DNA from: Haplodiscus bocki
Taxonomy: Eukaryota
Reading direction: 5' to 3'
Assembly: GCA_965655095.1 (NCBI GenBank)
Contig: OZ296649.1
Location: 87,854,001-87,918,000 of the forward strand
DNA: 64,000 bases
Position 1 is the stretch's first letter. Each line of letters starts with the position of its first letter. Position numbers and translations under genes: made by a program. Positions 21,416 to 56,200 of the stretch are shown one piece after another. The notes beneath the pieces are model-generated. The model was not told the DNA's origin and ran no database searches. It saw nothing but the letters and a program-made list of their open reading frames with translations.

Positions 21416-21866
21416 TGAAAATGCTTCATTTCACGTACAGAATCGTAATTCCGTTTATTTGACAAAAATACTTTGGAAAAGCCGACTTCAACGGAAACTG
21501 AAATTTCTTCTCCAAATAAGATTATCAATCGTGAAGATCTTAATCTTTATCACTAAACTATTGCCATCTACCTGTCGCTTTGATTTTTATTAAATTTATC
21601 ATTTTTTCACTAATACAGGTTTGATAATTAGTTTATCTAGTTTCATGTCAGCATAAGAATATAGTGTCGTTTACTCTTGAAAAGCATTTTGTGCCAAGTC
21701 CTGTATTCAGCATAATGGTTTTCTATTTAGGTGCTAGAATTTCATCTCAAACAAATAAATTAAGCGTAAAATATTTCATCAAAACTGGCAACCTGTTGTC
21801 GAGGGATCGGAACGTTATCCTAGAATCATCAGTAGTGACAATTTTTCTGAATGTTTCAATGTTCAA

Positions 21867-27400: not shown

Positions 27401-29710
27401 ATCCAATGTTAGCAGCTGAGCGTTTGCATAAATCTGCAATAGAAAACGACATTTGTGATCAAAAATAGTTGAAATTCAGTTTTCTGTTGCACCGACACTT
27501 ATTCCCACGAAACGTTTTTTGTTCTACAAGAACACAAAAGCTCGGACTTTATCCCTCTCCAGCGTAAACTGCACTACAACGGGTGAGCCTACTGCGAACT
27601 TCCTTGAAACTTCAACACTAATCCTGATCAAAAACTCCTTGTCCGAAAGACACTTATACAAATCATTACTGTCCTTTCTGTGTTTAAGAAATGTGCACTT
27701 CCAAAAAGAAAAGACGCCATTGTGAAAGACATTTTTAAATAAGGCCCAGTTATTTTGACCGGCTGAGATATGAATTTAGTAAAAAAGAATAAATCATTCT
27801 GTCTGATACAAAGCGACATAATTTTCTTGATTGAAAAAGTGCTGAAGCGGATACCATCAAATTATCCTTATGTGCAGTCGTTTCTCTTTTGGTTTTAATA
27901 AAAAACGGACTTTAGTTTCTGTTTTTGTAAGAACCAACTAGTCAAAAAATTTGATAATTACCCTTTTTCCAAAAGAGATGTTTTTATAACACCACTGCGA
28001 CTCATGCTGAAATTGCTCTCCCACAAAATGATGCCGCCCACAAAAAAAAAACGTATAAGTCGTGTCTATCATCTTATCCGTGGCATCTACTGCGTCCCAG
28101 CCTGGCCAGGTTTTGCAATCACCTCTTTTGAAGAAACTTCCTTCCTTCCTATGAACTCTTCTGTTAGTTTTCAAATGAATTCTCAAAGAACGGTACTTTT
28201 ACTCACGAACTCAAACATGGTAAAGTTTCACCGATCAACACAATTGTGTATTCGAAGATCATTTTAGAAATTTTCGACAAAAAACCATCATTTGGCTTCA
28301 ATATTTTTTGAAAAAAAACAATGTTTTACAGATTCAATCTTTTTCCAAAAAACAGTATTTTATCAATTATGTTCAATCTGCCTTTGGAAAGTTCCACTCC
28401 ACCGAAACAACTTCGTTGGACATGTCTTCCGAACTATTCTCGGACCGAAAAAAGAAGCAGAGTTTCCTGTGTATTTACCTTGACTTGTCTTCTGCTTCTG
28501 AAACTGCTGATCTTAGTATTTTGCCTAACATGTTACTCAAAACATGAGTAAACGACATTATTCTCTTTTTATTAGTTCTCTTATGTGGAAGGCGGTGCAA
28601 AATGAGTATTGAGTAATGGCCTGTTTTCTGACTTGAAGACCTTTACAAAAATTGTGCCTCAAATATTGATATTGGGGCCACTACATTTTGTTCTGTACGT
28701 GCTGCTTTTCTATAGTCACTTGAAAGAATGGCTTCTCCATTATCATATCCATGCAGATGATATAACAATCTATATGACTCGACTGGAGTATTACTTTAGT
28801 TGCGTATCTTTGGTTAATTGTCAGTGGAGAGACATCGGAAAAGTGTTAATAACGATACTTAACCTGAAACTCAAAGTGAATAGTTCCATAACGTATTGCA
28901 TGTTCGTAAAACCTCTGATAGTCGCATAACCGGAAAGGCACGTCAAGGAGGGATAAAATTTTAGAAAGATAAGGTGAACTAACGTGGTTGGCGTAGTGCT
29001 TGGCGGATGATTGAGTTACTGCACAATTTTTAACGTGCCGTGTGCTAGCTGTTATTCTCACCTGCGGGGCATTTTGACATTTAGAAGACAACCATCCCTT
29101 GAAACTACAAAGTTATTAATCTTAATTTTGTGACCAGCCGTTTTGACTATTGTTACTTTACAGCTCACTTGATTAATTGAGCCAGAAGCTACAGAGAGTT
29201 CAGAATAAAGCAATTGAAAAATTTTTTTTTCGCAACAGTACCCTATCGAATCCAGTGAGGCTCCGCGAATTACATTGGTTTCTTATCCGAGAAAGAATCT
29301 CTAACAATAACAGAGTCCTCCTTTAGAGTAGTTTTTCATCAGCTACCTGTGCCTTCCCACTTGTGAAACCCTTTAGTCAGATAAAGATAGTTATTGCATT
29401 ACATTTCCAAACAAACGCTTGACGTGAAACTTTCCTTCATTTGGACCGAAAGTCCGCTGTTGAATGTTGTTTCTGGGTGGCTGGTCCAAAGAATTGAAAA
29501 TTTCTCCCTGAAGATATATGAAGCGATATATGATCTTAATACGTTCATGTGTGGAGTGAAAACAAACAACTGCATTCTACGAACAGTTTGACCTGGAAAA
29601 AAGCAATAGCTTGAGTTTCAACTTCAGCTTCAATTCATTAAACAAATATTAGTGAACAGCTAAAACAAGAAAAAACTGTAGTATCTGCTTACCTTTTATA
29701 AAGTACGTCA
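22960..29710 (+). mobile_element. Old decayed L2-type LINE (PHD ORF1, APE endonuclease, RT), split by a nested LINE at 23190-26060
   Basis: RIQCDICDG*YH (23150-23190) resumes as ...VGLLWVF after 26065. EN-like FLCFGDL and GNVLDP (27260-27410). RT motifs QSAFGKFHSTETT, YLDLSSA, VPQILILGP and HADD. L2-type C-terminus VTSRFDYC, KLQRVQNKAI, LHWFLIRERI, FWVAGPKN*KFLPEDI. The 5' boundary is approximate. Confidence 0.8.
23190..26060 (-). mobile_element. CR1-group LINE, copy 3: ORF1, endonuclease and 3' tail, with the RT core deleted
   Basis: ORF1 from ATG 26060: MAAARGRRGGSVSEDNCVKC...FQCDACDSWSHA*C...YYCDYC (PHD C4HC3). APE motifs INARS, VTE*WL, GGGV, MCGDFND, LDKFLV, STDHDLV. Deletion junction at 23775/23776. 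Confidence 0.93.
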
Positions 29711-32700
29711 GAAAAACGTGCTTCACCCGGCAATCTGTAGATCTTCCTCACAGGGTTAAAATTGGTCCAACATATTAAAGAAAAAGCGTCTAGATCAGCC
29801 GCAACATGAGAAAAAAAGTCAGGTTTAGATCAACGTATTGCATTCAAGACCACATCGACTAACTGAAAAACAAAAGAAAAGTCACCTCTGATGGCTTCTG
29901 CAAATGAATGAGGACAATCGTCTTGCTTCAGCAACAGCGGAAGTTTTTGGGTCTTTGAAATCCTGTCGTCGACTCGAAGGGCTCGGCCGCAGACAAGTTA
30001 TGGAAATGCGGAAGAAAAAAAACGAAGTTTTAGACGATTGTAGCCAATCGTATTGGAGTAGCAATTCTGATCTTTGTTGCTGATCTTGAGCGCAAACCCA
30101 GAGATAAGCTCATAAGCAAGTATATCTCTCCCTGATGATATATGGAGCGATATACGAACTTAATACGTTCTTATCTGGAGTGAAAATGTACAACTGCATT
30201 CTTCGAACATATTGACTGGAGAAAAAGCAACAACTTGAATTTCAACTTCAGCCCAATTCATTAAACAAATATTAGTGAACAGCTAAAACAAGAATACACT
30301 GTAGTATATGCTTACCTTTTATAAAGTACGTCAGAAAAACATGCTTCACCCGGCAATCTGTAGATCTTCCTCACAGGGTTAAAATTGGTCCAACATATTA
30401 AAGAAAAAGCGTCTAAATCAGCCGCAACATGAGAAAAAAAGTCAGGTTTAGATCAACGTATTGCATTCAAGACCACATCGACTAACTGAAAAACAAAAGA
30501 AAAGTCACCTCTGATGGCTTCTGCAAATGAATGAGGACAATCGTCTTGCTTCAGCAACAGCGGAAGTTTTTGGGTCTTTGAAATCCTGTCGTCGACTCGA
30601 AGGGTTCGGGCGCAGACAAGTTATGGAAATACGGAAGAAAAAAAAACGAAGTTTTAGACGGTTGTAGCCAATCGTATTGGAGCAGCAATTCTGATCCTTG
30701 TTGCTGATCTTGAGCGCAAACCCAGAGATAAGCTCAAAAGCAAGTATATCTCTCCCTGAAGGTATACGAAACAATATACGAACTTAATACGTTCATGTCT
30801 GGAGTGAAAAAATGCAACTGCATTCTACAAACAGTTTGACCTGGAAAAAAGCAACAATTTGAGTTTCAACTTCAACTTCAATTCATTAAACAAATATTGA
30901 TGAATAGTTAAAACAAGAATATTCTGTAGTATCTGCTTACTTTTTATAAAGTACGTCAGAAAAACATGCTTCACCTGGCAATCAGTAGTTCTTCCTCACA
31001 GGGTTAAAACTTGTCCAACATTCTAAACAAAAAGCGTCTAAATCAGCCGCAACATTTGAAAAGAAGTCAAGCTTAGATTAACGTATTGTATTCAAGACCA
31101 AATCGGTTAACTGAAAAACAAAAGAAAAGTCACCTTTGATGGCTTCTGCAAATGAATGAGGACAATCGTCTTGTTTCGGCAACAGCGGATATCTCTGGGT
31201 CTTTGAAATCCTGTCGTCGACTCGAAGGGCTCGGGCGCAGACAAGTTATGGAAATGCGGAAGAAAAAAACACGAAGTGTTAGACGGCTGTAGCCAATCGT
31301 ATTGGAGCGGCAATTCTGATCCTTGTTGCTGATCTTGAGCGCTAACCCAGAGATAAGCTCAAAAGCAAGTATATCTCTCCCTGAAGATATATGAAGCGAT
31401 TTACGAACTTAATACGTTCTTATCTGGAGTGAAAATGTACAACTGCATTCTTCGAACAGTTTGACCTGGAAAAAAGCAACAACTTGAATTTCAACTTCAG
31501 CCGCAATTCAGTAAACAAATATTAGTGAACAGCTAAAACAAGAATACATTGTAGTATATGCTTACCTTTTATAAAGTACGTCAGAAAAACATGCTTCACC
31601 CGGCAATCTGTAGATCTTCCTCACAGGGTTAAAATTGGTCCAACATATTAAAGAAAAAGCGTCTAAATCAGCCGCAACATGAGAAAAAAAGTCAGGTTTA
31701 GATCAACGTATTGCATTCAAGACCACATCGACTACCTGAAAAACAAAAGAAAAGTCACCTCTGATGGCTTCTGCAAATGAATGAGGACAATCGTCTTGCT
31801 TCGGCAACAGCGGAAGTTTTTGGGTCTTTGAAATCCTGTCGTCGATTCGAAGGGTTCGGGTGCAGACAAGTTATGGAAATACGGAAGAAAAAAAAACGAA
31901 GTTTTAGACGATTGTAGCCAATCGTATTGGAGCAGCAATTCTGATCCTTGTTGCTGAGCTTGAGCGCAAACCCAGAGATAAACTCAAAAGCAAGTATATC
32001 TCTCACTGAAGATATATGAAGCGATTTACGAACTTAATACGTTCTTATCTGGAGTAAAATTGTACAACTGCATTCTATTTACAGTTTGACCTGGAAAAAA
32101 GCAACAACTTGAATTTCAACTTCAACCTCAATTCATTGAACAACTATTAGTGAACAGATAAAACAAAAAACAAACTGTAGTATCTCCTTACCTTTTTAAA
32201 GAACGTCAGAAAAACATCCTTCACCCGGCAATCTGTAGATCTTCCTCACAGGGTTAAAATTGGTCCGACATTTAAACAAAAAGCGTCCAAAATATCCGCA
32301 ACTTGAGAAAAGAAGTCACGCTTAGATCAATATATTGCATTCAAGACTACGTCGACTAACTGAAAAACAAAAAAAGTCACCTCTGATGGCTTCTGCAAAT
32401 GAATGGGGACAATCGTCTTGCTTCAGCAACAGCGGAAGTTATTGGGTCTTTGAAATCCTGTCGTCGACTCGAAGGGTTCGGGCGCAGACAAGTTATGGAA
32501 ATACGGAAGAAAAAAAAACGAAGTTTGAGACGGTTGTAGCCAATCGTATTGGAGCAGCAATTCTGATCCTTGTTGCTGATCTTGAGCGCAAACCCAGAGA
32601 TAAGCTCAAATGCAAGTATATCTCTCCCTGAAGGTATACGAAACAATATACGAACTTAATACGTTCATGTCTGGAGTGAAAAAATGCAACTGCATTCTAC

Positions 32701-35700
32701 AAACAGTTTGACCTGGAAAAAAGCAACAATTTGAGTTTCAACTTCAACTTCAATTCATTAAACAAATATTGATGAATAGTTAAAACAAGAATATTCTGTA
32801 GTATCTGCTTACTTTTTATAAAGTGCGTCAGAAAAACATGCTTCACCCGGCAATCAGTAGTTCTTCCTCACAGGGTTAAAACTTGTCCAACATTCTAAAC
32901 AAAAAGCATCTAAATCAGCTGCAACATTTGAAAGAAGTCAAGCTTAGATCAACGTATTGTATTCAAGACCAAATCGGTTAACTGAAAAACAAAAGAAAAG
33001 TCACCTTTGATGGCTTCTGCAAATGAATGAGGACAATCGTCCTGTTTCGGCAACAGCGGATATCTCTGGGTCTTTGAAATCCTGTCGTCGACTCGAAGGG
33101 CTCGAGCGCAGACAAGTTATGGAAATGCGGAAGAAAAAAACACGAAGTTTTAGACGGCTGTAGCCAATCGTATTGGAGCGGCAATTCTGATCCTTATCGC
33201 TGATCTTGAGCGCAAACCCAGAGATAAGCTCAAAAGCAAGTATATCTCTCACTGAAGATATATGGAGCGTTATACGAACTTAATACGTTCTTATCTGGAG
33301 TGAAAATGTACAACTGCATTCTTCGAACAGTTTGACCTGGAAAAAAGCAACAACTTGAATTTCAACTTCAGCCCCAATTCATTAAACAAATATTAGTGAA
33401 CAGCTAAAACAAGAATACACTGTAGTATATGCTTACCTTTTATAAAGTACGTCAGAAAAACATGCTTCACCCGGCAATCTGTAGATCTTCCTCACAGGGT
33501 TAAAATTGGTCCAACATATTAAAAAAAAGCGTCTAAATCAGCCGCAACATGAGAAAAAAAGTCAGGTTTAGATCAACGTATTGCATTCAAGACCACATCG
33601 ACTACCTGAAAAACAAAAGAAAAGTCACCTCTGATGGCTTCTGCAAATGAATGAGGACAATCGTCTTGCTTCGGCAACAGCGGAAGTTTTTGGGTCTTTG
33701 AAATCCTGTCGTCGATTCGAAGGGTTCGGGTGCAGACAAGTTATGGAAATACGGAAGAAAAAAAAACGAAGATTTAGACGGTTGTAGCCAATCGTATTGG
33801 AGCAGCAAGTCTGATCCTTGTTGCTGAGCTTGAGCGCAAACCCAGAGATAAGCTCAAAAGCAAGTATATCTCTCCCTGAAGATATATGAAGCGATTTACG
33901 AACTTAATACGTTCTTATCTGGAGTGAAAATGTACAACTGCATTCTTCGAACAGTTTGACCTGGAAAAAAGCAACAACTTGAATTTCAACTTCAACCTCA
34001 ATTCATTGAACAAATATTAGTGAACAGATAAAACAAAAAACAAACTGTAGTATCTCCTTACCTTTTATAAAGAACGTCAGAAAAACATCCTTCACCCGCA
34101 ATCTGTAGATCTTCCTCACAGGGTTAAAATTGGTCCGACATTTAAACAAATAGCGTCCAAATTATCCGCAACTTCAGAAAAGAAGTCACGCTTAGATCAA
34201 TATATTGCATTCAAGACTACATCGACTAACTGAAAAACAAAAAAAAGTCACCTCTGATGGATTCTGCAAATGAATGAGGACAATCGTCTTGCTTCAGCAA
34301 CAGCGGAACTCTCTGGGTCTTTGAAATCCTGTCGTCGACTCCAAGGGCTCGGGGGCAGACAAGTTATGGAAATGCGGAAGAAAAAAACACGAAGTTTTAG
34401 ACGGCTGTAGCCAATCGTATTGGAGCGGCAATTCTGATCCTTATCGCTGATCTTGAGCGCAAACCCAGAGATAAGCTCAAAAGCAAGTATATCTCTCCCT
34501 GAAGATATGTGGAGCGTTATACGAACTTAATACGTTCTTATCTGGAGTGAAAATGTACAACTGCATTCTTCGAACAGTTTGACCTGGAAAAAAGCAACAA
34601 CTTGAATTTCAACTTCAGCCCCAATTCATTAAACAAATATTGATGAATAGTTAAAACAAGAATAAACTGTAGTATCTGCTTACTTTTTATAAAGTACGTC
34701 AGAAAAATATGCGTCACCCGGCAATCAGTAGTTCTTCCTCACAGGGTTAAAACTTGTCCAACATTCTAAACAAAAAGCGTCTAAATCAGCCGCAACATTT
34801 GAAAAGAAGTCAAGCTTAGATCAACGTATTGTATTCAAGACCAAATCGGTTAACTGAAAAACAAAAGAAAAGTCACCTTTGACGGCTTCTGCAAATGAAT
34901 GAAGACAACCGTTTTGCTTCAGCAACAGCCGATATCTCTGGGTCTTTGAAATCCTGTCGTCGACTCGAAGGGCTCGGGCGCAGACAAGTTATGGAAATGC
35001 GGAAGAAAAAAACACGAAGTTTTAGACGGCTGTAGCCAATCGTATTGGAGCGGCAATTCTGATCCTTATCGCTGATCTTGAGCGCAAACCCAGAGATAAG
35101 CTCAAAAGCAAGTATATCTCTCCCTGAAGTTATATGGAGCGTTATACGAACTTAAGACGTTCTTATCTGGAGTAAAATTGTACAACTGCATTCTTCGAAC
35201 AAATTGACCTGGAAAAAAGCAACAACTTGAATTTCAACTTCAGCCCCAATTCAGTAAACAATTATTAGTGAACAGCTAAAACAAGAATACATTCTAGTAT
35301 ATGCTTACCTTTTATAAAGTACGTCAGAAAAACATGCTTCACCCGGCAATCTGTAGATCTTCCCTACAGGGTTAAAATTGGTCCAACATATTAAAGAAAA
35401 AGCGTCTAGATCAGCCGCAACATGAGAAAAAAAGTCAGGTTTAGATCAACGTATTGCATTCAAGACCACATCGACTAACTGAAAAACAAAAGAAAAGTCA
35501 CCTCTGATGGCTTCTGCAAATGAATGAGGACAATCGTCTTGCTTCAGCAACAGCGGAAGTTTTTGGGTCTTTGAAATCCTGTCGTCGACTCGAAGGGCTC
35601 GGGCGCAGACAAGTTATGGAAATACGGAAGAAAAAAAACGAAGTTTTAGACGGTTGTAGCCAATCGTATTGGAGCAGCAATTCTGATCCTTGTTGCTGAT

Positions 35701-38700
35701 CTTGAGCGCAAACCCAGAGATAAGCTCAAAAGCAAGTATATCTCTCCCTGAAGATATATGAAGCGATTTACGAACTTAATACGTTCTTATCTGGAGTGAA
35801 AATGTACAACTGCATTCTTCGAACAGTTTGACCTGGAAAAAAGCAACAACTTGAACTTCAACTTCAGCCGCAATTCAGTAAACAAATATTAGTGAACAGC
35901 TAAAACAAGAATACATTGTAGTATATGCTTACCTTTTATAAAGTACGTCAGAAAAACATGCTTCACCCGGCAATCTGTAGATCTTCCCTACAGGGTTAAA
36001 ATTGGTCAAACATATTAAAGAAAAAGCGTCTAAATCAGCCGCAACATGAGAAAAAAAGTCAGGTTTAGATCAACGTATTGCATTCAAGACCACATCGACT
36101 ACCTGGAAAACAAAAGAAAAGTCACCTCTGATGGCTTCTGCAAATGAATGAGGACAATCGTCTTGCTTCGGCAACAGCGGAAGTTTTTGGGTCTTTGAAA
36201 TCCTGTCGTCGACTCGAAGGGCTCGGGCGCAGACAAGTTATGGAAATACGGAAGAAAAAAAACGAAGTTTTAGACGGTTGTAGCCAATCGTATTGGAGCA
36301 GCAATTCTGATCCTTGTTGCTGATCTTGAGCGCAAACCCAGAGATAAGCTCAAAAGCAAGTATATCTCTCCCTGAAGATATATGAAGCGATTTACGAACT
36401 TAATACGTTCTTATCTGGAGTGAAAATGTACAACTGCATTCTTCGAACAGTTTGACCTGGAAAAAAGCAACAACTTGAATTTCAACTTCAGCCGCAATTC
36501 AGTAAACAAATATTAGTGAACAGCTAAAACAAGAATACATTGTAGTATATGCTTACCTTTTATAAAGTACGTCAGAAAAACATGCTTCACCCGGCAATCT
36601 GTAGATCTTCCCTACAGGGTTAAAATTGGTCAAACATATTAAAGAAAAAGCGTCTAAATCAGCCGCAACATGAGAAAAAAAGTCAGGTTTAGATCAACGT
36701 ATTGCATTCAAGACCACATCGACTAACTGAAAAACAAAAGAAAAGTCACCTCTGATGGCTTCTGCAAATGAATGAGGACAATCGTCTTGCTTCAGCAACA
36801 GCGGAAGTTTTTGGGTCTTTGAAATCCTGTCGTCGACTCCAAGGTCTCGGGCGCAGACAAGTTATGGAAATGCGGAAGAAAAAAACACGAAGTTTTAGAC
36901 GGCTGTAGCCAATCGTATTGGAGCGGCAATTCTGATCCTTATCGCTGATTTTGAGCGCAAACCCAGAGATAAGCTCAAAAGCAAGTATATCTCTCCCTGA
37001 AGATATATGAAGCGATTTACGAACTTAATACGTTCTTATCTGGAGTAAAATTGTACAACTGCATTCTATTTACAGTTTGACCTGGAAAAAAGCAACAACT
37101 TGAATTTCAACTTCAACCTCAATTCATTGAACAAATATTAGTGAACAGATAAAACAAAAAACAAACTGTAGTATCTCCTTACCTTTTATAAAGTACGTCA
37201 GAGAAACATGCGTCACCCGGCAATCAGTAGTTCTTCCTCACAGGGTTAAATCTTGTCCAACATTCTAAACAAAAAGCGTCTAAATCAGCCCCAACATTTG
37301 AAAAGAAGTCAAGCTTAGATCAACGTATTGTATTCAAGACCAAATCGGTTAACTGAAAAACAAAAGAAAAGTCACCTTTGATGGCTTCTGCAAATGAATG
37401 AAGACAACCGTTTTGCTTCAGCAACAGCGGATATCTCTGGGTCTTTGAAATCCTGTCGTCGACTCGAAGGGCTCGGGCGCAGACAAGTTATGGAAATGCG
37501 GAAGAAAAAAACACGAAGTTTTAGACGGCTGTAGCCAATCGTATTGGAGCGGCAATTCTGATCCTTATCGCTGATCTTGAGCGCAAACCCAGAGATAAGC
37601 TCAAAACCAAGTATATCTCTCCCTGAAGTTATATGGAGCGTTATACGAACTTAAGACGTTCTTATCTGGAGTGAAAATGTACAACTGCATTCTTCGAACA
37701 GTTTGACCTGGAAAAAAGCAACAACTTGAATTTCAACTTCAGCCGCAATTCAGTAAAAAAATATTAGTGAACAGCTAAAACAAGAATACAATCTAGTATA
37801 TGCTTACCTTTTATAAAGTACGTCAGAAAAACATGCTTCACCCGGCAATCAGTAGTTCTTCCTCACAGGGTTAAAACTTGTCCAACATTCTAGACAAAGA
37901 GCGTCTAAATCAGCCGCAACATTTGAAAAGAAGTCAAGCTTAGATCAACGTATTGTATTCAAGACCAAATCGGTTAACTGAAAAACAAAAGAAAAGTCAC
38001 CTTTGATGGCTTCTGCAAATGAATGAAGACAACCGTTTTGCTTCAGCAACAGCGGATATCTCTGGGTCTTTGAAATCCTGTCGTCGACTCGAAGGGCTCG
38101 GGCGCAGACAAGTTATGGAAATGCGGAAGAAAAAAACACGAAGTTTTAGACGGCTGTAGCCAATCGTATTGGAGCGGCAATTCTGATCCTTATCGCTGAT
38201 CTTGAGCGCAAACCCAGAGATAAGCTCAAAACCAAGTATATCTCTCCCTGAAGTTATATGGAGCGTTATACGAACTTAAGACGTTCTTATCTGGAGTGAA
38301 AATGTACAACTGCATTCTTCGAACAGTTTGACCTGGAAAAAAGCAACAACTTGAATTTCAACTTCAGCCGCAATTCAGTAAAAAAATATTAGTGAACAGC
38401 TAAAACAAGAATACAATCTAGTATATGCTTACCTTTTATAAAGTACGTCAGAAAAACATGCTTCACCCGGCAATCTGTAGATCTTCCTCACAGGGTTAAA
38501 ATTGGTCCAACATATTAAAGAAAAAGCGTCTAGATCAGCCGCAAAATGAGAAAAAAAGTCAGGTTTAGATCAACGTATTGCATTCAAGACCACATCGACT
38601 AACTGAAAAACAAAAGAAAAGTCACCTCTGACGGCTTCTGCAAATGAATGAGGACAATCGTCTTGCTTCGGCAACAGCGGAAGTTTTTGGGTCTTTGAAA

Positions 38701-44700: not shown

Positions 44701-47700
44701 ACCCGGCAATCTGTAGATCTTCCTCACAGGGTTAAAATTGGTGCGACAATTAAACAAAAAGCGTCCAAATTAGCCGCAACTTGAGAAAAGAAGTCACGCT
44801 TAGATCAATATATTGCATTCAAGACTACATCGACTAACTGAAAAACAAAAGAAAAGTCACCTCTGATGGCTTCTGCAAATGAATGAGGACACTCGTCTTG
44901 CTTCAGCAACAGCGGAACTCTCTGGGTCTTTGAAATCCTGTCTTCGACTCCAAGGGCTCGGGCGCAGACAAGTTATGGAAATTCGGAGAAAATTAAATCG
45001 ATTTTTCAACCAGTTGTAGCCAATTGCATTGGAGCAGCAGTTCTGATCCTTATCGCTGACCTTGACCGCAAACCCAGAGATAAGCTCAAAAGCAAAGATA
45101 TCTCTCCCTGAAGGTATACGAAACAATATACGAACTTAATACGTTCATGTCTGGAGTGAAAAAATGCAACTGCATTCTACGAACAGTTTGACCTGGAAAA
45201 AAGCAACAATTTGAGTTTCAACTTCAAATTCAATTCATTAAACAAATATTGATGAATAGTTAAAACAAAAATAAACTGTAGTATCTGCTTACCTTTTAGC
45301 AACTACGTCAGAAAAACATGCTTCACCCGGCAATCAGTAGTTCTTCCTCACAGGGTTAAAACTTGTCCAACATTCTAGACAAAGAGCGTCTAAATCAGCC
45401 GCAACATTTGAAAAGAAGTCAAGCTTAGATCAACGTATTGTATTCAAGACCACATCGACTAACTGAAAAACAAAAGAAAAGTCACCTCTGATGGCTTCTG
45501 CAAATGAATGAGGACAATCGTCTTGCTTCAGCAACAGCGGAAGTTTTTGGGTCTTTGAAATCTGTCGTCGACTCGAAGGGCTCGGGCGCAGACAAGTTAT
45601 GGAAATACGGAAGAGAAAAAACGAAGTTTTAGACGGTTGTAGCCAATCGTATTGGAGCAGCAATTCTGATCCTTAATGCTGATCTTGAGCGCAAACCCAG
45701 AGATAAGCTCAAAAGCAAGTATATTTCTCCCTGAAGATCTATGAAGCGATTTACGAACTTAATACGTTCTTATCTGGAGTGAAAATGTACAACTGCATTC
45801 TTCGAACAGTTTGACCTGGAAAAAAGCAACAACTTGAATTTCAACTTCAGCCCCAATTCAGTAAACAAATTTTGGTGAACAGCTAAAACAAGAATACATT
45901 GTAGTATATGTTTACCTTTTATAAAGTACGTCAGAAAAACATGCTTCACCCGGCAATCTGTAGATCTTCCTCACAGGGTTAAAATTGGTCCAACATATTA
46001 AAGAAAAAGCGTCTAGATCAGCCGCAACATGAGAAAAAAAGTCAGGTTTAGATCAACGTATTGCATTCAAGACCACATCGACTAACTGAAAAACAAAAGA
46101 AAAGTCACCTCTGATGGCTTCTGCAAATGAATGAGGACAATCGTCTTGCTTCAGCAACAGCGGAAGTTTTTGGGTCTTTGAAATCTGTCGTCGACTCGAA
46201 GGGCTCGGGCGCAGACAAGTTATGGAAATACGGAAGAGAAAAAACGAAGTTTTAGACGGTTGTAGCCAATCGTATTGGAGCAGCAATTCTGATCCTTAAT
46301 GCTGATCTTGAGCGCAAACCCAGAGATAAGCTCAAAAGCAAGTATATTTCTCCCTGAAGATCTATGAAGCGATTTACGAACTTAATACGTTCTTATCTGG
46401 AGTGAAAATGTACAACTGCATTCTTCGAACAGTTTGACCTGGAAAAAAGCAACAACTTGAATTTCAACTTCAGCCCCAATTCAGTAAACAAATTTTGGTG
46501 AACAGCTAAAACAAGAATACATTGTAGTATATGTTTACCTTTTATAAAGTACGTCAGAAAAACATGCTTCACCCGGCAATCTGTAGATCTTCCTCACAGG
46601 GTTAAAATTGGTCCAACATATTAAAGAAAAAGCGTCTAGATCAGCCGCAACATGAGAAAAAAAGTCAGGTTTAGATCAACGTATTGCATTCAAGACCACA
46701 TCGACTAACTGAAAAACAAAAGAAAAGTCACCTCTGATGGCTTCTGCAAATGAATGAGGACAATCGTCTTGCTTCAGCAACAGCGGAAGTTTTTGGGTCT
46801 TTGAAATCTGTCGTCGACTCGAAGGGCTCGGGCGCAGACAAGTTATGGAAATACGGAAGAGAAAAAACGAAGTTTTAGACGGTTGTAGCCAATCGTATTG
46901 GAGCAGCAATTCTGATCCTTAATGCTGATCTTGAGCGCAAACCCAGAGATAAGCTCAAAAGCAAGTATATCTCTCCCTGAAGATTTATGAAGCGATTTAC
47001 GAACTTAATACGTTCTTATCTGGAGTAAAATTGTACAACTGCATTCTATTTACAGTTTGACCTGGAAAAAAGCAACAATTTGAGTTTCAACATCAACTTC
47101 AATTCATTAAACAAATATTGATGAATAGTTAAAACAAAAATAAACTGTAGTATCTGCTTACCTTTTAGCAACTACGTCAGAAAAACATCCTTCACCCGGC
47201 AATCTGTAGATCTTCCTCACAGGGTTAAAATTGGTGCGACAATTAAACAAAAAGCGTCCAAATTAGCCGCAACTTGAGAAAAGAAGTCACGCTTAGATCA
47301 ATATATTGCATTCAAGACTACATCGACTAACTGAAAAACAAAAGAAAAGTCACCTCTGATGGCTTCTGCAAATGAATGAGGACACTCGTCTTGCTTCAGC
47401 AACAGCGGAACTCTCTGGGTCTTTGAAATCCTGTCTTCGACTCCAAGGGCTCGGGCGCAGACAAGTTATGGAAATTCGGAGAAAATTAAATCGATTTTTC
47501 AACCAGTTGTAGCCAATTGCATTGGAGCAGCAGTTCTGATCCTTATCGCTGACCTTGACCGCAAACCCAGAGATAAGCTCAAAAGCAAAGATATCTCTCC
47601 CTGAAGGTATACGAAACAATATACGAACTTAATACGTTCATGTCTGGAGTGAAAAAATGCAACTGCATTCTACGAACAGTTTGACCTGGAAAAAAGCAAC

Positions 47701-50700
47701 AATTTGAGTTTCAACTTCAACTTCAATTCATTAAACAAATATTGATGAATAGTTAAAACAAAAATAAACTGTAGTATCTGCTTACCTTTTAGCAACTACG
47801 TCAGAAAAACATGCTTCACCCGGCAATCAGTAGTTCTTCCTCACAGGGTTAAAACTTGTCCAACATTCTAGACAAAGAGCGTCTAAATCAGCCGCAACAT
47901 TTGAAAAGAAGTCAAGCTTAGATCAACGTATTGTATTCAAGACCAAATCGGTTAACTGAAAAACAAAAGAAAAGTCACCTTTGATGGCTTCTGCAAATGA
48001 ATGAGGACAACCGTCTTGCTTCAGCAACAGCGGATATCTCTGGGTCTTTGAAATCCTGTCGTCGACTCGAAGGGCTCGGGCGCAGACAAGTTATGGAAAT
48101 ACGGAAGAAAAAAAAACGAAGTTTTAGATGGTTGTAGCCAATCGTATTGGAGCAGCAATTCTGATCCTTGTTGCTGATCTTGAGCGCAAACCCAGAGATA
48201 AGCTCAAAAGCAAGTATATTTCTCCCTGAAGATCTATGAAGCGATTTACGAACTTAATACGTTCTTATCTGGAGTGAAAATGTACAACTGCATTCTTCGA
48301 ACAGTTTGACCTGGAAAAAAGCAACAACTTGAATTTCAACTTCAGCCCCAATTCAGTAAACAAAATTTAGTGAACAGCTAAAACAAGAATACATTGTAGT
48401 ATATGCTTACCTTTTATAAAGTACGTCAGAAAAACATGCTTCACCCGGCAATCTGTAGATCTTCCTCACAGGGTTAAAATTGGTCCAACATATTAAAGAA
48501 AAAGCGTCTAGATCAGCCGCAACATGAGAAAAAAAGTCAGGTTTAGATCAACGTATTGCATTCAAGACCACATCGACTAACTGAAAAACAAAAGAAAAGT
48601 CACCTCTGATGGCTTCTGCAAATGAATGAGGACAATTGTCTTGCTTCAGCAACAGCGGAAGTTTTTGGGTCTTTGAAATCTGTTGTCGACTCGAAGGGCT
48701 CGGGCGCAGACAAGTTATGGAAATATGGAAGAGAAAAAACGAAGTTTTAGACGGTTGTAGCCAATCGTATTGGAGCAGCAATTCTGATCCTTAATGCTGA
48801 TCTTGAGCGCAAACCCAGAGATGAGCTCAAAAGCAAGTATATCTCTCCCTGAAGATTTATGAAGCGATTTACGAACTTAATACGTTCTTATCTGGAGTAA
48901 AATTGTACAACTGCATTCTATTTACAGTTTGACCTGGAAAAAAGCAACAACTTGAATTTCAACTTCAACCTCAATTCATTGAACAAATTTTAGTGAACAG
49001 ATAAAACAAAAAACAAACTGTAGTATCTCCTTACTTTTTATAAAGAACGTCAGAAAAACATCCTTCACGGGGCAATCTGTAGATCTTGCTCACAGGGTTA
49101 AAATTGGTCCAACATTTTAAACAAAAAGCGTCCAAATTAGCCGCAACTTGAGAAAAGAAGTCACGCTTAGATCAAAATATTGCATTCAAGACTACATCGA
49201 CTAACTGAAAAACAAAAAAAAGTCACCTCTGATGGATTCTGCAAATGAATGAGGACAATCGTCTTGCTTCAGCAACAGCGGAACTCTCTGGGTCTTTGAA
49301 ATCTTGTCGTCGACTCCAAGGGCTCGGGCGCAGATAAGTTATGGAAATTCGGAGAAAATTAAATCGATTTTTCAACCAGTTGTAGCCAATCGCATTTGAG
49401 CAGCAATTCTGATCCTTATCGCTGACCTTGACCGCAAACCCAGAGATAAGCTTAAAAGCAAAAATATCTCTCCCTGAAGGTATACAAAACGATATATGAA
49501 CTTAATACGTTCATGTCTGGAGTGAAAAAATGCAACTGCATTCTACGAACAGTTTGACCTGGAAAAAAGCATCAACTTGAGTTTCAACTTCAACTTCAAT
49601 TCATTAAACAAATATTGATGAATAGTTAAAACAAAAATAAACTGTAGTATCTGCTTACTTTTTATAAAGTACGTCAGAAAAACATGCTTTACCCGGCAAT
49701 CAGTAGATCTTCCTCACAGGGTTAAAATTGGTCCAACATTCTAAACAAAAAGCGTCTAAATCAGCCGCAACATTTGAAAAGAAGTCAAGCTTAGATCAAC
49801 GTATTGTATCCAAGACCAAATCGGTTAACTGAACGACAAAGGAAAAGTCACCTTTGATGGCTTCTGCAAATGAATGAGCACAATCGTCTTGCTTCAGCAA
49901 CAGCTGAAGTCTTTGGGTCTCTGAAATCCTGTCGTCGACTCAAAAGGCTCGTGCGCAGACAAGTTACAGAATTGCGGAGAAAAATAAAACGCTGTTTTGA
50001 ACGGTTGTAGCCAACTGTATTGGAGCAGCAAATCTGATCCTTATCGCTGATCTTGAGCGCAAACCCAGAGATAGGCTCAAAAACAAGTCCATGCCTCCAT
50101 GAAGATATATGAAGCGATATACAAACTTAATACGTTCTTATCTGGAGTAAAATTGTACAACTGCCTTCTACTTACAGTTTGACCTGGAAAAAAGCAACAA
50201 CTTGAATTCCAACTTCAACCTCAATTCATTATACAAATATTAGTGAACAGATAAAACAAAAAACAAACTGTAGTATCTCCTTACCTTTTATAAAGAACGT
50301 CAGAAAAACATGCTTCACCCGGCAGTCTGTAGATCTTCCTCACAGGGTTAAAATTGGTGCGACATATTAAAGAAAAAGCGTCTAGATCAGCCGCAACATG
50401 AGAAAAGAAGTCACGCTTAGATCAATATATTGCATTCAAGACTACATCGACTAACTGAAAAACAAAAGAAAAGTCACCTCTGATGGCTTCTGCAAATGAA
50501 TGAGGACACTCGTCTTGCTTCAGCAACAGCGGAACTCTCTGGGTCTTTGAAATCCTGTCTTCGACTCCAAGGGCTCGGGCGCAGACAAGTTATGGAAATT
50601 CGGAGAAAATTAAATCGATTTTTCAACCAGTTGTAGCCAATTGCATTGGAGCAGCAGTTCTGATCCTTATCGCTGACCTTGACCGCAAACCCAGAGATAA

Positions 50701-53700
50701 GCTCAAAAGCAAAGATATCTCTCCCTGAAGGTATACGAAACAATATACGAACTTAATACGTTCATGTCTGGAGTGAAAAAATGCAACTGCATTCTACGAA
50801 CAGTTTGACCTGGAAAAAAGCAACAATTTGAGTTTCAACTTCAACTTCAATTCATTAAACAAATATTGATGAATAGTTAAAACAAAAATAAACTGTAGTA
50901 TCTGCTTACCTTTTAGCAACTACGTCAGAAAAAAATGCTTCACCCGGCAATCAGTAGTTCTTCCTCACAGGGTTAAAACTTGTCCAACATTCTAGACAAA
51001 GAGCGTCTAAATCAGCCGCAACATTTGAAAAGAAGTCAAGCTTAGATCAACGTATTGTATTCAAGACCAAATCGGTTAACTGAAAAACAAAAGAAAAGTC
51101 ACCTTTGATGGCTTCTGCAAATGAATGAGGACAACCGTCTTGCTTCAGCAACAGCGGATATCTCTGGGTCTTTGAAATCCTGTCGTCGACTCGAAGGGCT
51201 CGGGCGCAGACAAGTTATGGAAATACGGAAGAAAAAAAAACGAAGTTTTAGATGGTTGTAGCCAATCGTATTGGAGCAGCAATTCTGATCCTTGTTGCTG
51301 ATCTTGAGCGCAAACCCAGAGATAAGCTCAAAAGCAAGTATATTTCTCCCTGAAGATCTATGAAGCGATTTACGAACTTAATACGTTCTTATCTGGAGTG
51401 AAAATGTACAACTGCATTCTTCGAACAGTTTGACCTGGAAAAAAGCAACAACTTGAATTTCAACTTCAGCCCCAATTCAGTAAACAAAATTTAGTGAACA
51501 GCTAAAACAAGAATACATTGTAGTATATGCTTACCTTTTATAAAGTACGTCAGAAAAACATGCTTCACCCGGCAATCTGTAGATCTTCCTCACAGGGTTA
51601 AAATTGGTCCAACATATTAAAGAAAAAGCGTCTAGATCAGCCGCAACATGAGAAAAAAAGTCAGGTTTAGATCAACGTATTGCATTCAAGACCACATCGA
51701 CTAACTGAAAAACAAAAGAAAAGTCACCTCTGATGGCTTCTGCAAATGAATGAGGACAATTGTCTTGCTTCAGCAACAGCGGAAGTTTTTGGGTCTTTGA
51801 AATCTGTTGTCGACTCGAAGGGCTCGGGCGCAGACAAGTTATGGAAATATGGAAGAGAAAAAACGAAGTTTTAGACGGTTGTAGCCAATCGTATTGGAGC
51901 AGCAATTCTGATCCTTAATGCTGATCTTGAGCGCAAACCCAGAGATGAGCTCAAAAGCAAGTATATCTCTCCCTGAAGATTTATGAAGCGATTTACGAAC
52001 TTAATACGTTCTTATCTGGAGTAAAATTGTACAACTGCATTCTATTTACAGTTTGACCTGGAAAAAAGCAACAACTTGAATTTCAACTTCAACCTCAATT
52101 CATTGAACAAATTTTAGTGAACAGATAAAACAAAAAACAAACTGTAGTATCTCCTTACTTTTTATAAAGAACGTCAGAAAAACATCCTTCACGGGGCAAT
52201 CTGTAGATCTTGCTCACAGGGTTAAAATTGGTCCAACATTTTAAACAAAAAGCGTCCAAATTAGCCGCAACTTGAGAAAAGAAGTCACGCTTAGATCAAA
52301 ATATTGCATTCAAGACTACATCGACTAACTGAAAAACAAAAAAAAGTCACCTCTGATGGATTCTGCAAATGAATGAGGACAATCGTCTTGCTTCAGCAAC
52401 AGCGGAACTCTCTGGGTCTTTGAAATCTTGTCGTCGACTCCAAGGGCTCGGGCGCAGATAAGTTATGGAAATTCGGAGAAAATTAAATCGATTTTTCAAC
52501 CAGTTGTAGCCAATCGCATTTGAGCAGCAATTCTGATCCTTATCGCTGACCTTGACCGCAAACCCAGAGATAAGCTTAAAAGCAAAAATATCTCTCCCTG
52601 AAGGTATACAAAACGATATATGAACTTAATACGTTCATGTCTGGAGTGAAAAAATGCAACTGCATTCTACGAACAGTTTGACCTGGAAAAAAGCATCAAC
52701 TTGAGTTTCAACTTCAACTTCAATTCATTAAACAAATATTGATGAATAGTTAAAACAAAAATAAACTGTAGTATCTGCTTACTTTTTATAAAGTACGTCA
52801 GAAAAACATGCTTCACCCGGCAATCAGTAGATCTTCCTCACAGGGTTAAAATTGGTCCAACATTCTAAACAAAAAGCGTCTAAATCAGCCGCAACATTTG
52901 AAAAGAAGTCAAGCTTAGATCAACGTATTGTATCCAAGACCAAATCGGTTAACTGAACGACAAAGGAAAAGTCACCTTTGATGGCTTCTGCAAATGAATG
53001 AGCACAATCGTCTTGCTTCAGCAACAGCTGAAGTCTTTGGGTCTCTGAAATCCTATCGTCGACTCAAAAGGCTCGTGCGCAGACAAGTTACAGAATTGCG
53101 GAGAAAAATAAAACGCTGTTTTGAACGGTTGTAGCCAACTGTATTGGAGCAGCAAATCTGATCCTTATCGCTGATCTTGAGCGCAAACCCAGAGATAGGC
53201 TCAAAAACAAGTCCATGCCTCCATGAAGATATATGAAGCGATATACAAACTTAATACGTTCTTATCTGGAGTAAAATTGTACAACTGCCTTCTACTTACA
53301 GTTTGACCTGGAAAAAAGCAACAACTTGAATTCCAACTTCAACCTCAATTCATTATACAAATATTAGTGAACAGATAAAACAAAAAACAAACTGTAGTAT
53401 CTCCTTACCTTTTATAAAGAACGTCAGAAAAACATGCTTCACCCGGCAGTCTGTAGATCTTCCTCACAGGGTTAAAATTGGTCCAACATATTAAAGAAAA
53501 AGCGTCTAGATCAGCCGCAACATGAGAAAAAAAGTCAGGTTTAGATCAACGTATTGCATTCAAGACCACATCGACTAACTGAAAAACAAAAGAAAAGTCA
53601 CCTCTGATGGCTTCTGCAAATGAATGAGGACAATCGTCTTGCTTCAGCAACAGCGGAAGTTTTTGGGTCTTTGAAATCTGTCGTCGACTCGAAGGGCTCG

Positions 53701-54049
53701 GACGCAGACAAGTTATGGAAATGCGGAAGAAAAAAAAACGAAGTTTTAGATGGTTGTAGCCAATCGTATTGGAGCAGCAATTCTGATCCTTGTTGCTGAT
53801 CTTGAGCGCAAACCCAGAGATAAGCTCAAAAGCAAGTATATCTCTCCCTGAAGATATATGAAGCGATTTACGAACTTAATACGTTCTTATCTGGAGTGAA
53901 AATGTACAACTGCATTCTACGAACAGTTTGACCTGGATAAAAGCAACAACTTGAATTTCAACTTCAGCCTCAATTCATTAAACAAATATTAGTGAACAGC
54001 TAAAATAAGAATAAACTGTAGTATCTGCTTACCTTTCATAAAGTACGTC
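29501..54049. repeat. Tandem satellite array: 39 complete monomers of about 624 bp plus a partial, with higher-order repeats
   Basis: The anchor TCTCCCTGAAG recurs from about 29503 to about 53843 (24340 bp = 39 x 624.1). The ORF track repeats at 622-625 bp spacing. Confidence 0.99.
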
Positions 54050-54151
54050 CTTTATCGTTCACATACTACTTTGAAGTTAAAGTAAATGTCTGCGTGCTGA
54101 AGCCAGTATTCGTGGAGAAAAACATTAGTGAGCCCTTCTGTATCAGCAGTC

Positions 54152-56200
54152 TGAAAAACATGCTACACGCGGCAGGCTGCACATCCTCCTCACAGGGTTA
54201 AAATTGGTCCAACATATTAAACAAAAAGCGTCTAAATCAGCAGCAAGAGGAGAAAAGAAGTCCAACTGAGGTCAATCTATTGCATTCAAGACCACATCGA
54301 CTAATTGAGAATTTAAAAAAGTCACATTTGATGGCTTGTGGAAATGAAAGAAGACAATCGTCTTTCTTAAACAACAGCGACAATTTCTGGGTCTTTAAAA
54401 ACATGTCGCCGAATCAAACGGCTGGGCTGTAGATAAGTTTTGGAAGTGCAGAGGAAAGTTTTTCAATTTTTCAACCAGATGTAGCCAATCGCATTGGAGC
54501 AGCAATTCTGATCGTTATCACTGATCTTGAGCGCAAACCCAGAGATAAGCTCAGAAACGTGTTCATGCTGTACCCTCCAATTACTTGTGCCATTAGTTGC
54601 ATCTAGTCTTCCTTATCCATATCTCAGTCTTCTCAGAGATTTTTGAAAGGTAGAACCATTTTTGAGATCTTCGGGAAAATACTCTGCAAGTACATTGAAT
54701 ATTTTGGCGCCAAAAAACGTTCTGGAAAATCTAGACTCCCAGAAACCTTTCGTTTGAAAAGTGAGGCGGCATTCATTTTCAGTACATGCTGTTTTGAGAT
54801 CGATGTATTCCCGTTCCAATTCCTGGAGTTTTGTCTCTCTCCACTTCAAGGTCAAAGGAAAGGTCTCATGATTCCTGCAAATGGCAAACGTACCTCGTCA
54901 GGTTTTTGGTTTTAGACTCTTTTTTCACAATGCAGGAGGTCATTAACTCTATGAGTTTCCGAGCAGGGCCATTGCGAGTGTATAACTTGCGTTCTTCGTC
55001 TCCTAACTCTTACCTTTTCGCAAGACTATCATGACTCTCCAAGTTGGTGTGGTTGAAACCGTATTGCTTCATAAACAAGGCCGCAAGCCAGTTTTTTTGT
55101 CCTATGATGGAAAAATTAGGACAATTTTTTGTTGAGTTTTCTCACGCTCGGTTGTTAGGGCGGTGGTTTTTGGCCTCTGCAAGTTCTGTTTTTATTACAA
55201 AATCTGGTGTTTTGCTTCAGACTGTTTTCAGCGGGCAGCCGTGACGTCGTCATCATCCATCTGTGGTCGTACAACTTTCGACCAGTCCAGGTCATCGCTC
55301 CTATCATGCCGCATCAGGATGCTCCAGCCAAACTTATTAGAGGAAAGAGAGAAGAGCGTCACTTGGTGGCTGTGACAAAGCAAAGGCCGGCTACATTCGG
55401 GATCAGTTTTTGTTTTATCAAGAGTTTCGCTGTTGTCGAAGCTCCTTTCAATGTCTGGCTCTAAGAACCACCGCCTACGTTGGACACCTCTGGTTAAAGC
55501 ATTATAAACATTTTCAGTTAATTTTCTGCGTGTTGTGCGAAGTTGCCAAAACTTTGCGTTTACTCCGAAAAAGTCTTCCACTCGAAGTTTCTCGACGCGT
55601 GTGTTGATGCTATAACGGATCCAAAGGCATGTTGTCTCTCTTTCATTTCTATGTCCAGGTTGAGGAACATATTCCGGTCCTTTTATGTGACACTCTGAAT
55701 TTACGACAGTTGGATCTCAACGAGAGAAAAGTGTCTGGAAACTCATTTTTTTGAAAAAAACAAAGCGGGAAGCAGCGCTGCGATATTTTACGTAGGCAGT
55801 GAGTCGAAAAAACCTCAAAACTGTAAAACAAAAGCATCTAGGGTGCACGAAGGCACGCTATTAGTTCATTATTTACCTTTTTGGACAACAACGGTTGTCT
55901 TCTGATTTGTCCTTTGCGTGGTCACAGGAACATTTTGACCCTGAAGTTTTTTCTCAAACTTCGTAAATTATTGTGTTGTTCTCGGACTATGAACCTGTGG
56001 AGTGTTTTTGGTTGCTGGTGTTGATAAAACTGCAGTCTACGTGTCCACTGAATCAATTTGGGATGTTTTTTCCGAAAAAAACTTCAGTTTCTTTTTTCTA
56101 CATAGCGTTACATTCTCCAGGCATCGGGCGTTTACCTCCAGCTATGCTAAAGTAACTTCAAAGTACAGACAACTGCACACATAAATCGGCAGCAACGCAA
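54152..56200 (-). mobile_element. Decayed CRE-like non-LTR retrotransposon (RT C-terminus, zinc finger, restriction-like endonuclease); its 3' end is the parent of the satellite
   Basis: - strand remnants NVYNALTRGVQ, LFSLS..KFG, KNWLAALFMKQYGFN, LLHCEK...DEVRLPFAGIMRD, CRLTFQTKGFWESRFSRTFFGAKIFN and FALKISD...AIGYI match the CRE-clade pattern (ASxWLxxLP, HxxxCxxGG..RH, ARLDI.A.GFW...FFDV..F). The upstream boundary is uncertain. Confidence 0.75.

What the first reader, a model, noticed from the sequence alone, without database searches (positions are those of the whole stretch)
29420..54600. Satellite born in place from the tail-to-tail junction of two convergent LINEs (L2 and CRE-like)
Seen: the first ~208 bp of each monomer continue the L2 on the left in frame (VAGPKN*KF|LPEDI..YDLNTFMCGVKT, the L2 C-terminal motif AGPxLWNxLPxxIR...FKxxLKT) plus downstream sequence. 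The other ~415 bp are the reverse complement of the last ~85 codons and 3' region of the CRE-like element on the right (FALKISDKDQNCCSNTIGY...AVAEARRL), whose diverged original sits at 54152-54557 and runs on into the element body. Both parents still bracket the 24.5-kb array, a rare complete record of satellite birth. Inference: every monomer holds two opposed retrotransposon 3' ends, so read-through from either side could yield dsRNA or piRNA against two LINE clades, or RNA that their RTs could mobilise.
Basis: partly seen in the sequence, partly recalled or inferred. Interest (0 to 1): 0.85.

Follow-up and report, generated by a model that had tools for sequence, protein, structure and literature searches.

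The report
Single-locus satellite born from two LINE tails
A 24.5-kb tandem repeat found at one place in this animal genome was copied on the spot from the gap where the tail ends of two dead jumping genes face each other; it is a clean worked example of a known way that satellites arise, with no sign of a function so far.

Summary
Window 29500-54049 is a head-to-tail array of 39 full monomers of about 624 bp plus one 210-bp partial monomer.

Each monomer has three parts:
- the last ~30 codons and 3' tail of the left LINE (+ strand, ~125 bp);
- ~80 bp of spacer found nowhere else in the genome;
- ~410 bp that are the reverse complement of the last ~70-76 codons and ~180 bp of 3' UTR of the right LINE.

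Both parent copies run without a break from their bodies into the array edges. A diverged parental copy (B', 54149-54557, ~81% identical) sits just outside the array. B' and the array share 74 derived bases against other copies of that LINE family, with equal private branches (27 and 26).

Both junction 28-mers and the spacer occur only here in the 1.5-Gb assembly.

One refinement: the monomers lack 99 bp (54050-54148), including the right LINE's terminal ~58 bp. That stretch survives only at the right edge.

The right element is an R2-group LINE, with RT followed by a CCHC motif and a PD-(D/E)XK nuclease. This fits "CRE-like", but the clade is unresolved. The L2 label rests on C-terminal motifs only.

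The dsRNA/piRNA idea is untested: no RNA runs were available.

Earlier notes of this scan report other transposon-derived arrays in this genome on other DNA. This is a new member of a known kind.

The parts
26160..29499 (+). Body of the left, degenerate LINE copy (L2/CR1-type by C-terminal motifs). It runs without a break into the first monomer.
   Evidence: Dispersed family copies align over 26160-29625 at 63-67%, in single stretches across 29500. Weak RVT_1 hit at 28606-28926. Motifs LQRVQNKA..LRELHW match those of copy L022/L047.
29500..53839 (+). 39 full monomers of ~624 bp. Each holds A (left LINE's last ~30 codons and tail, ~125 bp, then ~80 bp unique spacer) followed by B (~410 bp, reverse complement of the right LINE's 3' coding end and 3' UTR).
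   Evidence: monomer coordinates, 87.7-99.5% to the reference monomer; identity matrix: three subfamilies and higher-order units; a central monomer hits both LINE families.
53840..54049 (+). Terminal partial monomer, A part only (the 40th A copy), 94% identical to the reference.
   Evidence: A contig of run X3 bridges 53976-54126 with no differences, at single-copy depth.
54050..54090 (.). Unique spacer remnant between the last A part and the right LINE's 3' end. Absent from all monomers.
   Evidence: Genome DNA search: only the self match covers query positions 91-136. Junction alignment.
54091..54148 (-). Terminal ~58 bp of the right LINE's 3' UTR. Present in the parental copy, deleted from the monomers. 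The trinucleotide GTC lies at both deletion ends.
   Evidence: More than 20 family copies begin alignment at 54090-54098. The older copies stop resembling each other a few bases past that point. Junction comparison.
54149..54557 (-). B': the parental, non-homogenised copy of the monomer's B part (last ~70-76 codons and ~180 bp of 3' UTR of the right LINE).
   Evidence: 80.6% identical to the monomer. 74 shared derived states with the array against 6 outgroup copies; 27 array-only and 26 B'-only. Frame. The ORF end is projected at ~54330-54346 from the intact relative L059.
54558..56101 (-). Body of the right, degenerate R2-group LINE copy (post-RT region, CCHC/RHN motif, PD-(D/E)XK nuclease). 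It is cut at 56102 by a younger, abundant repeat.
   Evidence: tblastn of the intact 1010-aa ORF of L059: residues 755-784 match 55102-55013 and residues 824-913 match 54897-54619, E 5.8e-17. phmmer hits P0002-P0005. Family DNA hits reach 55684.

Best explanation
Two LINE copies once lay tail to tail, about 100-125 bp apart. On the left was an L2/CR1-type element on the + strand, ending near 29625-29645. On the right was an R2-group element (with a restriction-like endonuclease) on the - strand, ending near 54088. A ~718-bp stretch spanning both tails was duplicated in tandem. It ran from inside the left ORF's C-terminal motif to ~70 codons before the right ORF's stop. The duplication created the new B|A joint, which carries about 10 unmatched bases. 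One copy then lost 99 bp between two GTC trinucleotides, and this shorter ~624-bp unit was amplified to 39 copies. Amplification was most likely by unequal exchange and segmental duplication. It produced three monomer subfamilies and recent 4- and 5-monomer higher-order units. The rightmost unit kept the 99 bp. Its B part (B'), cut off from the array by that non-homologous stretch, then drifted on its own.

Shown: the anatomy, the homology, the single locus and the sister relation of B' and the array. Inferred: the order of events and the recombination mechanism. I take the array to be a neutral by-product with no shown function.
For: Structure L-(A B)x39-A-g-B'-R, with 40 A copies and 39 B copies plus B'.

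Left family copies align across 29500, and right family copies across 54557.

A central monomer alone hits both families: positions 35-126 match the left family and 192/209-622 the right family.

Polarity test: 74 shared derived states, 27 array-only, 26 B'-only.

Junction 28-mers occur 35 and 37 times in the 1.5-Gb assembly, all within C2:87883695-87907841, which is the window array. Reversed-pattern controls give 0.

The spacer search gives 40 matches, all in this array, and the 41-bp remnant is unique.

Junction sequences show GTC at both ends of the 99-bp deletion and about 10 bases of filler at B|A.

Higher-order units: monomers 30-33 and 35-38 are ~100% identical pairwise, and the 3.1-kb units are 98.8% identical.

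Short-read contigs from runs X1-X3 (at most three samples, one study) reproduce the A|B joint at high depth and the A|g edge at single-copy depth.
Against: No relative's genome could be searched, so the unamplified state was never seen. The order of events is therefore a reconstruction.

B' is 81% identical to the monomers while the adjacent last A part is 94%. This needs the added assumption that the 99-bp stretch blocks homogenisation.

The runs laid are Logan contigs, not long reads. Copy number and internal order therefore rest on the assembly alone.

A run labelled as another organism (X5) already carries the deleted A|B joint at 96% identity. It gives no view of an earlier stage.
Confidence: 0.85

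Rival explanations
1. The repeat is a dispersed composite element or a pre-existing satellite family that arrived here from elsewhere. On this view its resemblance to the flanks is coincidental, or the flanks are merely decayed edge monomers.
For: Both LINE families are dispersed and common, so chimeras could arise elsewhere. The first DNA search missed even the window's own array, so one search mode is blind to it.
Against: Junction words and the spacer are found only at this locus. The flanks continue for 1.5-3.4 kb as ordinary LINE bodies, far beyond monomer content. B' shares 74 derived states with the array.
Confidence: 0.03
2. The array is real but was made by a circular intermediate: excision of the A-B segment as extrachromosomal circular DNA, rolling-circle copying, then re-insertion by homologous recombination. 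On this view unequal crossing-over was not the founding step.
For: Both array joints are non-homologous joins with 0-3 bp of microhomology or filler, as expected for end-joined circles. Re-insertion by homology would leave exactly the observed L-(AB)n-A-g-B'-R layout.
Against: Nothing in the sequence tells this apart from duplication followed by unequal exchange. The three deep subfamilies and the nested higher-order units show long stepwise growth in place rather than one burst.
Confidence: 0.15
3. The array is kept because it works as a two-strand source of small RNAs (dsRNA or piRNA) against the two LINE groups.
For: Each monomer carries the 3' regions of two LINEs in opposite orientation. 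Related R2-group families with open ~1000-aa ORFs still exist in this genome.
Against: No RNA run holds the stretch. There is no Rfam match, and the monomer folds no better than shuffled sequence (z = +0.95). The monomer is only 60-74% identical to dispersed copies of its parent families and gave no DNA hit to the younger intact families L058-L069, which is too little for small-RNA targeting. Monomers diverge by up to 15% with no sign of constraint.
Confidence: 0.05
4. Assembly artefact: a short duplication inflated, or a much larger satellite collapsed, by the assembler.
For: Long tandem arrays are often mis-sized in assemblies. No read spanning the array was available.
Against: Contigs from runs X1-X3 recover several monomer variants. 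Their summed word depths are about 14-40 times those of the flanking single-copy contigs in X2 and X3, which points to tens of copies (the tool warns that depth is no copy number). The monomer variants form an ordered, non-random higher-order pattern.
Confidence: 0.04

Closest known systems
Chicken HinfI (SCR1) satellite derived from the CR1 LINE, and the common cetacean satellite derived from the L1 3' end (as listed in the review PMC9659126)
   Same: The satellite monomer is built from the 3' UTR and a partial ORF2 end of a LINE.
   Different: Those are abundant, multi-locus satellites from one LINE, and the parental copy is not known. Here there is a single 24.5-kb locus, two LINE families in opposite orientation plus unique spacer, and both parents still attached.
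[quoted passage not shown]
   Same: A tandem repeat whose unit combines pieces of two different non-LTR retrotransposons.
   Different: 18HT comes from telomere-specific elements that naturally lie head to tail, and it sits at the Y centromere. Here two unrelated, dead LINE copies lie tail to tail in an ordinary chromosome arm.
TE tandem dimers as seeds of satellites (McGurk and Barbash 2018, PMC5932611)
   Same: A transposon-containing tandem duplicate at one site is the substrate that later expands into an array.
   Different: In that model the dimer arises from two insertions of the same element at one target site, with a target-site-duplication-sized joint. Here the unit is a segmental duplication across two different elements, with end-joining-type joints.
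Tandem repeats derived from centromeric retrotransposons in maize (Sharma et al. 2013, PMC3648361)
   Same: Local tandem amplification of an internal retrotransposon segment, with monomers traceable to the element.
   Different: That case involves an LTR retrotransposon in a centromeric setting. I did not read that paper beyond its abstract.

Membership tests
Transposon-derived satellite / tandem repeat | Head-to-tail array of similar monomers | tested here: met
   39.3 copies of ~624 bp, each 87.7-99.5% identical to the reference monomer.
Transposon-derived satellite / tandem repeat | Monomer homologous to dispersed transposable elements | tested here: met
   A central monomer hits copies of two LINE families elsewhere in the genome. 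The flank analyses agree.
Classical satellite DNA (abundant, many loci, heterochromatic) | High copy number at several chromosomal sites | tested here: not met
   All 35, 37 and 40 matches of two junction words and the spacer lie in this one array.
Higher-order-repeat satellite | Blocks of several distinct monomers repeated as a unit with higher identity than neighbouring monomers | tested here: met
Monomers 30-34 against 35-39 are 98.8% identical over 3.1 kb, while neighbours are 85-92%.
L2 clade of LINEs (left parent) | Conserved ORF2 C-terminal block (..LQxVQNxAA..LHWL..AGPxLWNxLPxxI..FKxxLKT) and a short-repeat 3' tail | tested here: inconclusive
   The motifs are visible, and a TTCAAC/TTCAGC/TTCAAT tail lies at ~29620-29640. 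That these motifs define L2 is my own knowledge; no reference sequence was compared.
L2 clade of LINEs (left parent) | RT phylogeny placing it in L2; an APE endonuclease N-terminal to the RT | tested here: inconclusive
   Only a weak RVT_1 hit (E 0.0016). No APE hit in the degenerate upstream pieces. No named references were at hand.
R2 group of LINEs (CRE, NeSL, R2, R4, Hero; right parent) | Single ORF with RT followed by a CCHC motif and a PD-(D/E)XK endonuclease; no APE (definition from PMC3636483) | tested here: met
   The window pieces align to the C-terminal third of an intact 1010-aa relative that carries WYADDG, CxC..H..C..RHNEIRD and RPDI...FFDVKIF. Of the 120 listed relatives, of 619-1426 aa, those with precomputed Pfam domains carry RVT_1 and none carries an endonuclease family. 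The CCHC/RHN stretch of the relative aligns weakly to PDB chain 8gh6_A, which I know to be R2Bm.
CRE clade specifically | RT phylogeny within CRE | not testable with these tools
   No named CRE, NeSL, R4 or Hero references were available. Database relatives are unnamed.
CRE clade specifically | Insertion into spliced-leader genes (classical trypanosomatid CRE) | tested here: inconclusive
   Family copies lie on many chromosomes, and their sequence past the 3' end differs. Their targets were not examined.
Dual-strand small-RNA (piRNA) cluster | Small RNAs from both strands | not testable with these tools
   No RNA run holds the stretch.

The most novel reading that the evidence does not exclude
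The array is more than debris. Because every unit carries opposed 3' regions of an L2-type and an R2-group LINE, read-through from either flank would make double-stranded RNA. The locus would then be kept as a small-RNA trap against two LINE groups, caught at a stage where its birth can still be read from the flanks.
Probability: 0.05. Interest if true: 0.6.

Novelty: new member of a known kind. Interest (0 to 1): 0.35.

Why it matters
Transposon-derived satellites are well known, but the founding locus is usually lost. Here the whole path can be read in one 30-kb stretch: both parental LINE copies, the unique spacer, the two new joints, an edge unit that still keeps the 99 bp lost from all other units, and later higher-order duplication. 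That makes it a useful teaching and calibration case. It could be used to date the steps of satellite growth, and to test how non-homology blocks homogenisation (B' at 81% against the adjacent A part at 94%). It does not change what is known about how satellites arise, and no function is shown.

Tried and rejected
1. TRF found nothing because the period exceeds its 500-bp limit. I used k-mer spacing and BLAST instead.

2. The whole-genome DNA search with a full monomer did not return even the window's own array. I discarded it as evidence for a single locus and replaced it with pattern and spacer searches.

3. Searches showed that this stretch is the degenerate PD-(D/E)XK nuclease core (RPDI...FFDVKIFNP in the intact relative), and that the ORF runs on to ~54330-54346. 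I withdrew that reading.

4. Pfam on the degenerate pieces of both flanks gave almost nothing.

5. The five extended copies of the right family hold no long ORF.

6. The protein atlas gave no clade information for the left element.

7. phmmer against 1.84 billion representative proteins gave only 4 fragmentary relatives.

8. Rfam and RNA folding of the monomer were negative.

10. No relatives of this genome are available, so the unamplified locus could not be sought.
Full report
**What is there.**
K-mer spacing in the window peaks sharply at 623-625 bp between 29631 and 54012. TRF reported nothing only because its longest period is 500. BLAST with one monomer, rotated to start at the left edge, gives 39 full copies from 29500 to 53839. 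A 210-bp partial copy follows at 53840-54049. Beyond a 99-bp gap lies a diverged copy of the other part of the monomer, at 54149-54557, 80.6% identical. The layout is therefore L-(A B)x39-A-g-B'-R. A is ~208 bp, B is ~415 bp, g is 54050-54148, and L and R are the flanks. AT skew is uniformly high across the array.

**The left parent.**
Dispersed copies of an old LINE family (63-67% identical) align to window 26160-29625. Several of them form single stretches that cross the array edge at 29500 and stop at 29621-29625.

- The frame FWVAGPKN*KFLPEDI spans the edge.
- A second frame reads YDLNTFMCGVKT..., with a stop at 29589-29591.
- Upstream pieces read LQRVQNKA and LRELHW. These match RLDYCNSL..VHNKAA..LRELHWL in a better-preserved copy.
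- A short run TTCAAC/TTCAGC/TTCAAT follows near 29620-29640.

From my own knowledge this C-terminal block and the short-repeat tail are typical of L2/CR1-type LINEs. I had no named references, Pfam gave only a weak RVT_1 hit, and no endonuclease hit appeared. L2 is therefore a likely label, not a tested one.

Only about 125 bp of A are LINE. The remaining ~80 bp have no dispersed relatives. A genome search with 53960-54095 returned 40 matches, all of them the 40 A copies of this array, and the next 41 bp (54050-54090) matched only themselves.

**The right parent.**
More than twenty genome copies begin to align at 54090-54098, and some run on to 55604-55684. In the older copies, similarity to each other ends a few bases past that point. 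The element's 3' end therefore lies near 54085-54091 on the - strand.

I first misread its ...FFGAKIFNVLAEYFPEDLK... as an L2-like C-terminus. A phmmer search then found fragments P0002-P0005, which place the window piece 55231-55716 downstream of a WYADDG reverse-transcriptase motif.

A related family in the same genome has an open 1010-aa ORF (L059). Along it lie these motifs, in order:
- RT (RVT_1);
- SSWLNALPLERYGFNLTKGEFRD;
- a CxC...H...C...RHNEIRD motif;
- RPDI...FFDVKIFNP;
- a tail ...KLAEKISIKK...SEAAINQ.

tblastn places residues 755-784 and 824-913 of that ORF on window 55102-55013 and 54897-54619 (E 5.8e-17). A weak colinear match places the FALKIS... stretch 44 residues before the stop. 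The window ORF therefore ended near 54330-54346.

Of the 120 listed database relatives (619-1426 aa), those with precomputed Pfam domains carry RVT_1 and none carries an endonuclease family. The CCHC/RHN stretch of L059 aligns weakly to PDB chains 8gh6_A and 8ibw_C, which I know to be R2Bm. A single ORF with RT followed by CCHC and a PD-(D/E)XK nuclease defines the R2 group, which comprises CRE, NeSL, R2, R4 and Hero (PMC3636483). 'CRE-like' is thus right at group level, and the clade is open. The copy is cut at 56102 by a much younger, very abundant repeat.

**Is the array descended from these very copies?**
A central monomer, taken alone, hits left-family copies with positions 35-126 and right-family copies with positions 192/209-622.

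I aligned B', the 39 array B parts and six outgroup copies of the right family, and counted well-supported sites. B' and the array share 74 states that differ from the outgroup majority. 27 states are private to the array and 26 are private to B'. B' and the array are therefore sister descendants of one inserted copy, with equal branches since they separated. They differ at about 17% of the polarised sites.

**Single locus.**
A 28-mer across the A|B joint and one across the B|A joint, each allowing 3 mismatches, occur 35 and 37 times in the 1.5-Gb assembly. All lie in C2:87883695-87907841, which is the window array. The reversed-pattern controls give 0. The spacer search agrees. The earlier whole-monomer search is uninformative, because it missed even the window's own array.

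**Joints.**
- At B|A, homology to B' ends at ...GATAAGCTCA and homology to the left flank starts at TCTCCCTGAAG. About 10 bases in between match neither.
- At A|B, the array reads ...AAGTACGTC|AGAAAAAC. The edge unit reads ...AAGTACGTC|(99 bp)...CAGCAGTC|TGAAAAAC. The 99 bp were thus lost between two GTC trinucleotides.

The lost stretch includes the right LINE's genuine terminal ~58 bp. The edge unit is therefore the older state, and the monomers carry a deletion.

**Later history.**
The identity matrix shows three monomer subfamilies that differ by up to 15%. It also shows nested higher-order units. Monomers 30-33 and 35-38 are ~100% identical pairwise (3.1-kb units, 98.8% overall). Monomers 22, 24, 27 and 28 are identical. 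The deepest within-array divergence is nearly as large as the distance from the array to B', so growth began soon after the founding duplication and is still recent.

**Independent reads.**
The stretch is held by four runs of one organism and study, and weakly by one run under another organism label. None is recorded as RNA.

All runs laid were Logan contigs.
- A contig of X3 bridges 53976-54126 with no differences, at single-copy depth.
- Contigs ending at 54049 carry the loose end AGAAAAACATGC..., which is the A|B joint, at high depth.
- Summed word depth over monomer bins is about 14-40 times that of the flanking contigs in X2 and X3. This fits tens of copies, though the tool warns that depth is no copy number.
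- Run X5 (organism B) holds a 141-nt contig across the deleted A|B joint at 96% identity. The array therefore exists in that sample too. What organism B is was not disclosed.

**Function.**
There is no Rfam match on either strand, and the monomer folds no better than shuffled sequence (z = +0.95).

Several results weaken it:
- The monomers lack the right LINE's 3' terminus.
- Every scored copy of the left family carries stop codons, and the five extended copies of the right family have no long ORF.
- The monomer is only 60-74% identical to dispersed copies of its parent families.
- The monomer gave no DNA hit to the younger intact R2-group families L058-L069.

**Comparison and verdict.**
LINE-derived satellites are established. 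Examples are the chicken HinfI satellite from CR1, the cetacean common satellite from L1, and Drosophila 18HT from HeT-A plus TART (PMC9659126). Transposon tandem duplicates as seeds of satellites are also established (PMC5932611).

Earlier unchecked notes of this scan report other transposon-derived arrays made on the spot in this same genome, which one note calls a probable reef coral.

This locus is a new, unusually legible member of that kind. It is not a new kind.

Noticed in passing
window 4837-18133, with partial third copy at 19180-24406: A 6.65-kb unit is duplicated in tandem (4837-11485 and 11481-18133, 98.5% identical). Pieces of a third copy follow at 19180-20294, 21867-23775 and 23773-24406 (94-98%). 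A second, much larger tandem duplication therefore lies just upstream of the satellite.
   Followed up: partly
window 56102 to at least 58600: A very abundant younger repeat (over 10,000 first-look candidates, copies 80-86% identical) starts sharply at 56102 and cuts the right LINE copy. It was not identified.
   Followed up: no
window 54091-54317; loci L007-L012, L014, L015, L017-L019, L021: The terminal ~227 bp of the right LINE's 3' UTR also occurs (71-74% identical) as an internal module of a younger, abundant repeat family. Its copies are highly similar to each other and continue for more than 130 bp past the LINE's end. This may be a non-autonomous element that borrowed a LINE 3' UTR.
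   Followed up: partly
L059:733-3765 (-), also L058, L060-L062 and others: R2-group LINE families with uninterrupted reading frames of about 750-1100 aa are present at many sites of this genome. They may still be active.
   Followed up: partly
L047:2206-4735 (-): Next to an old copy of the left LINE family lies a well-preserved APE-type LINE. It has two overlapping open frames of 491 aa (Exo_endo_phos) and 357 aa (RVT_1).
   Followed up: no
window 23986-25934 (-): Minus-strand ORF fragments that look like the endonuclease and N-terminal parts of another LINE (GDFNDF motif; a cysteine-rich N-terminus) lie upstream of the left parent.
   Followed up: no
run X5 (organism B), laid on window 52716-52856: A run filed under a different organism and study holds monomer sequence with the same deleted A|B joint at 96% identity, at depth 2. 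It is either a close relative or the same species under another label.
   Followed up: partly
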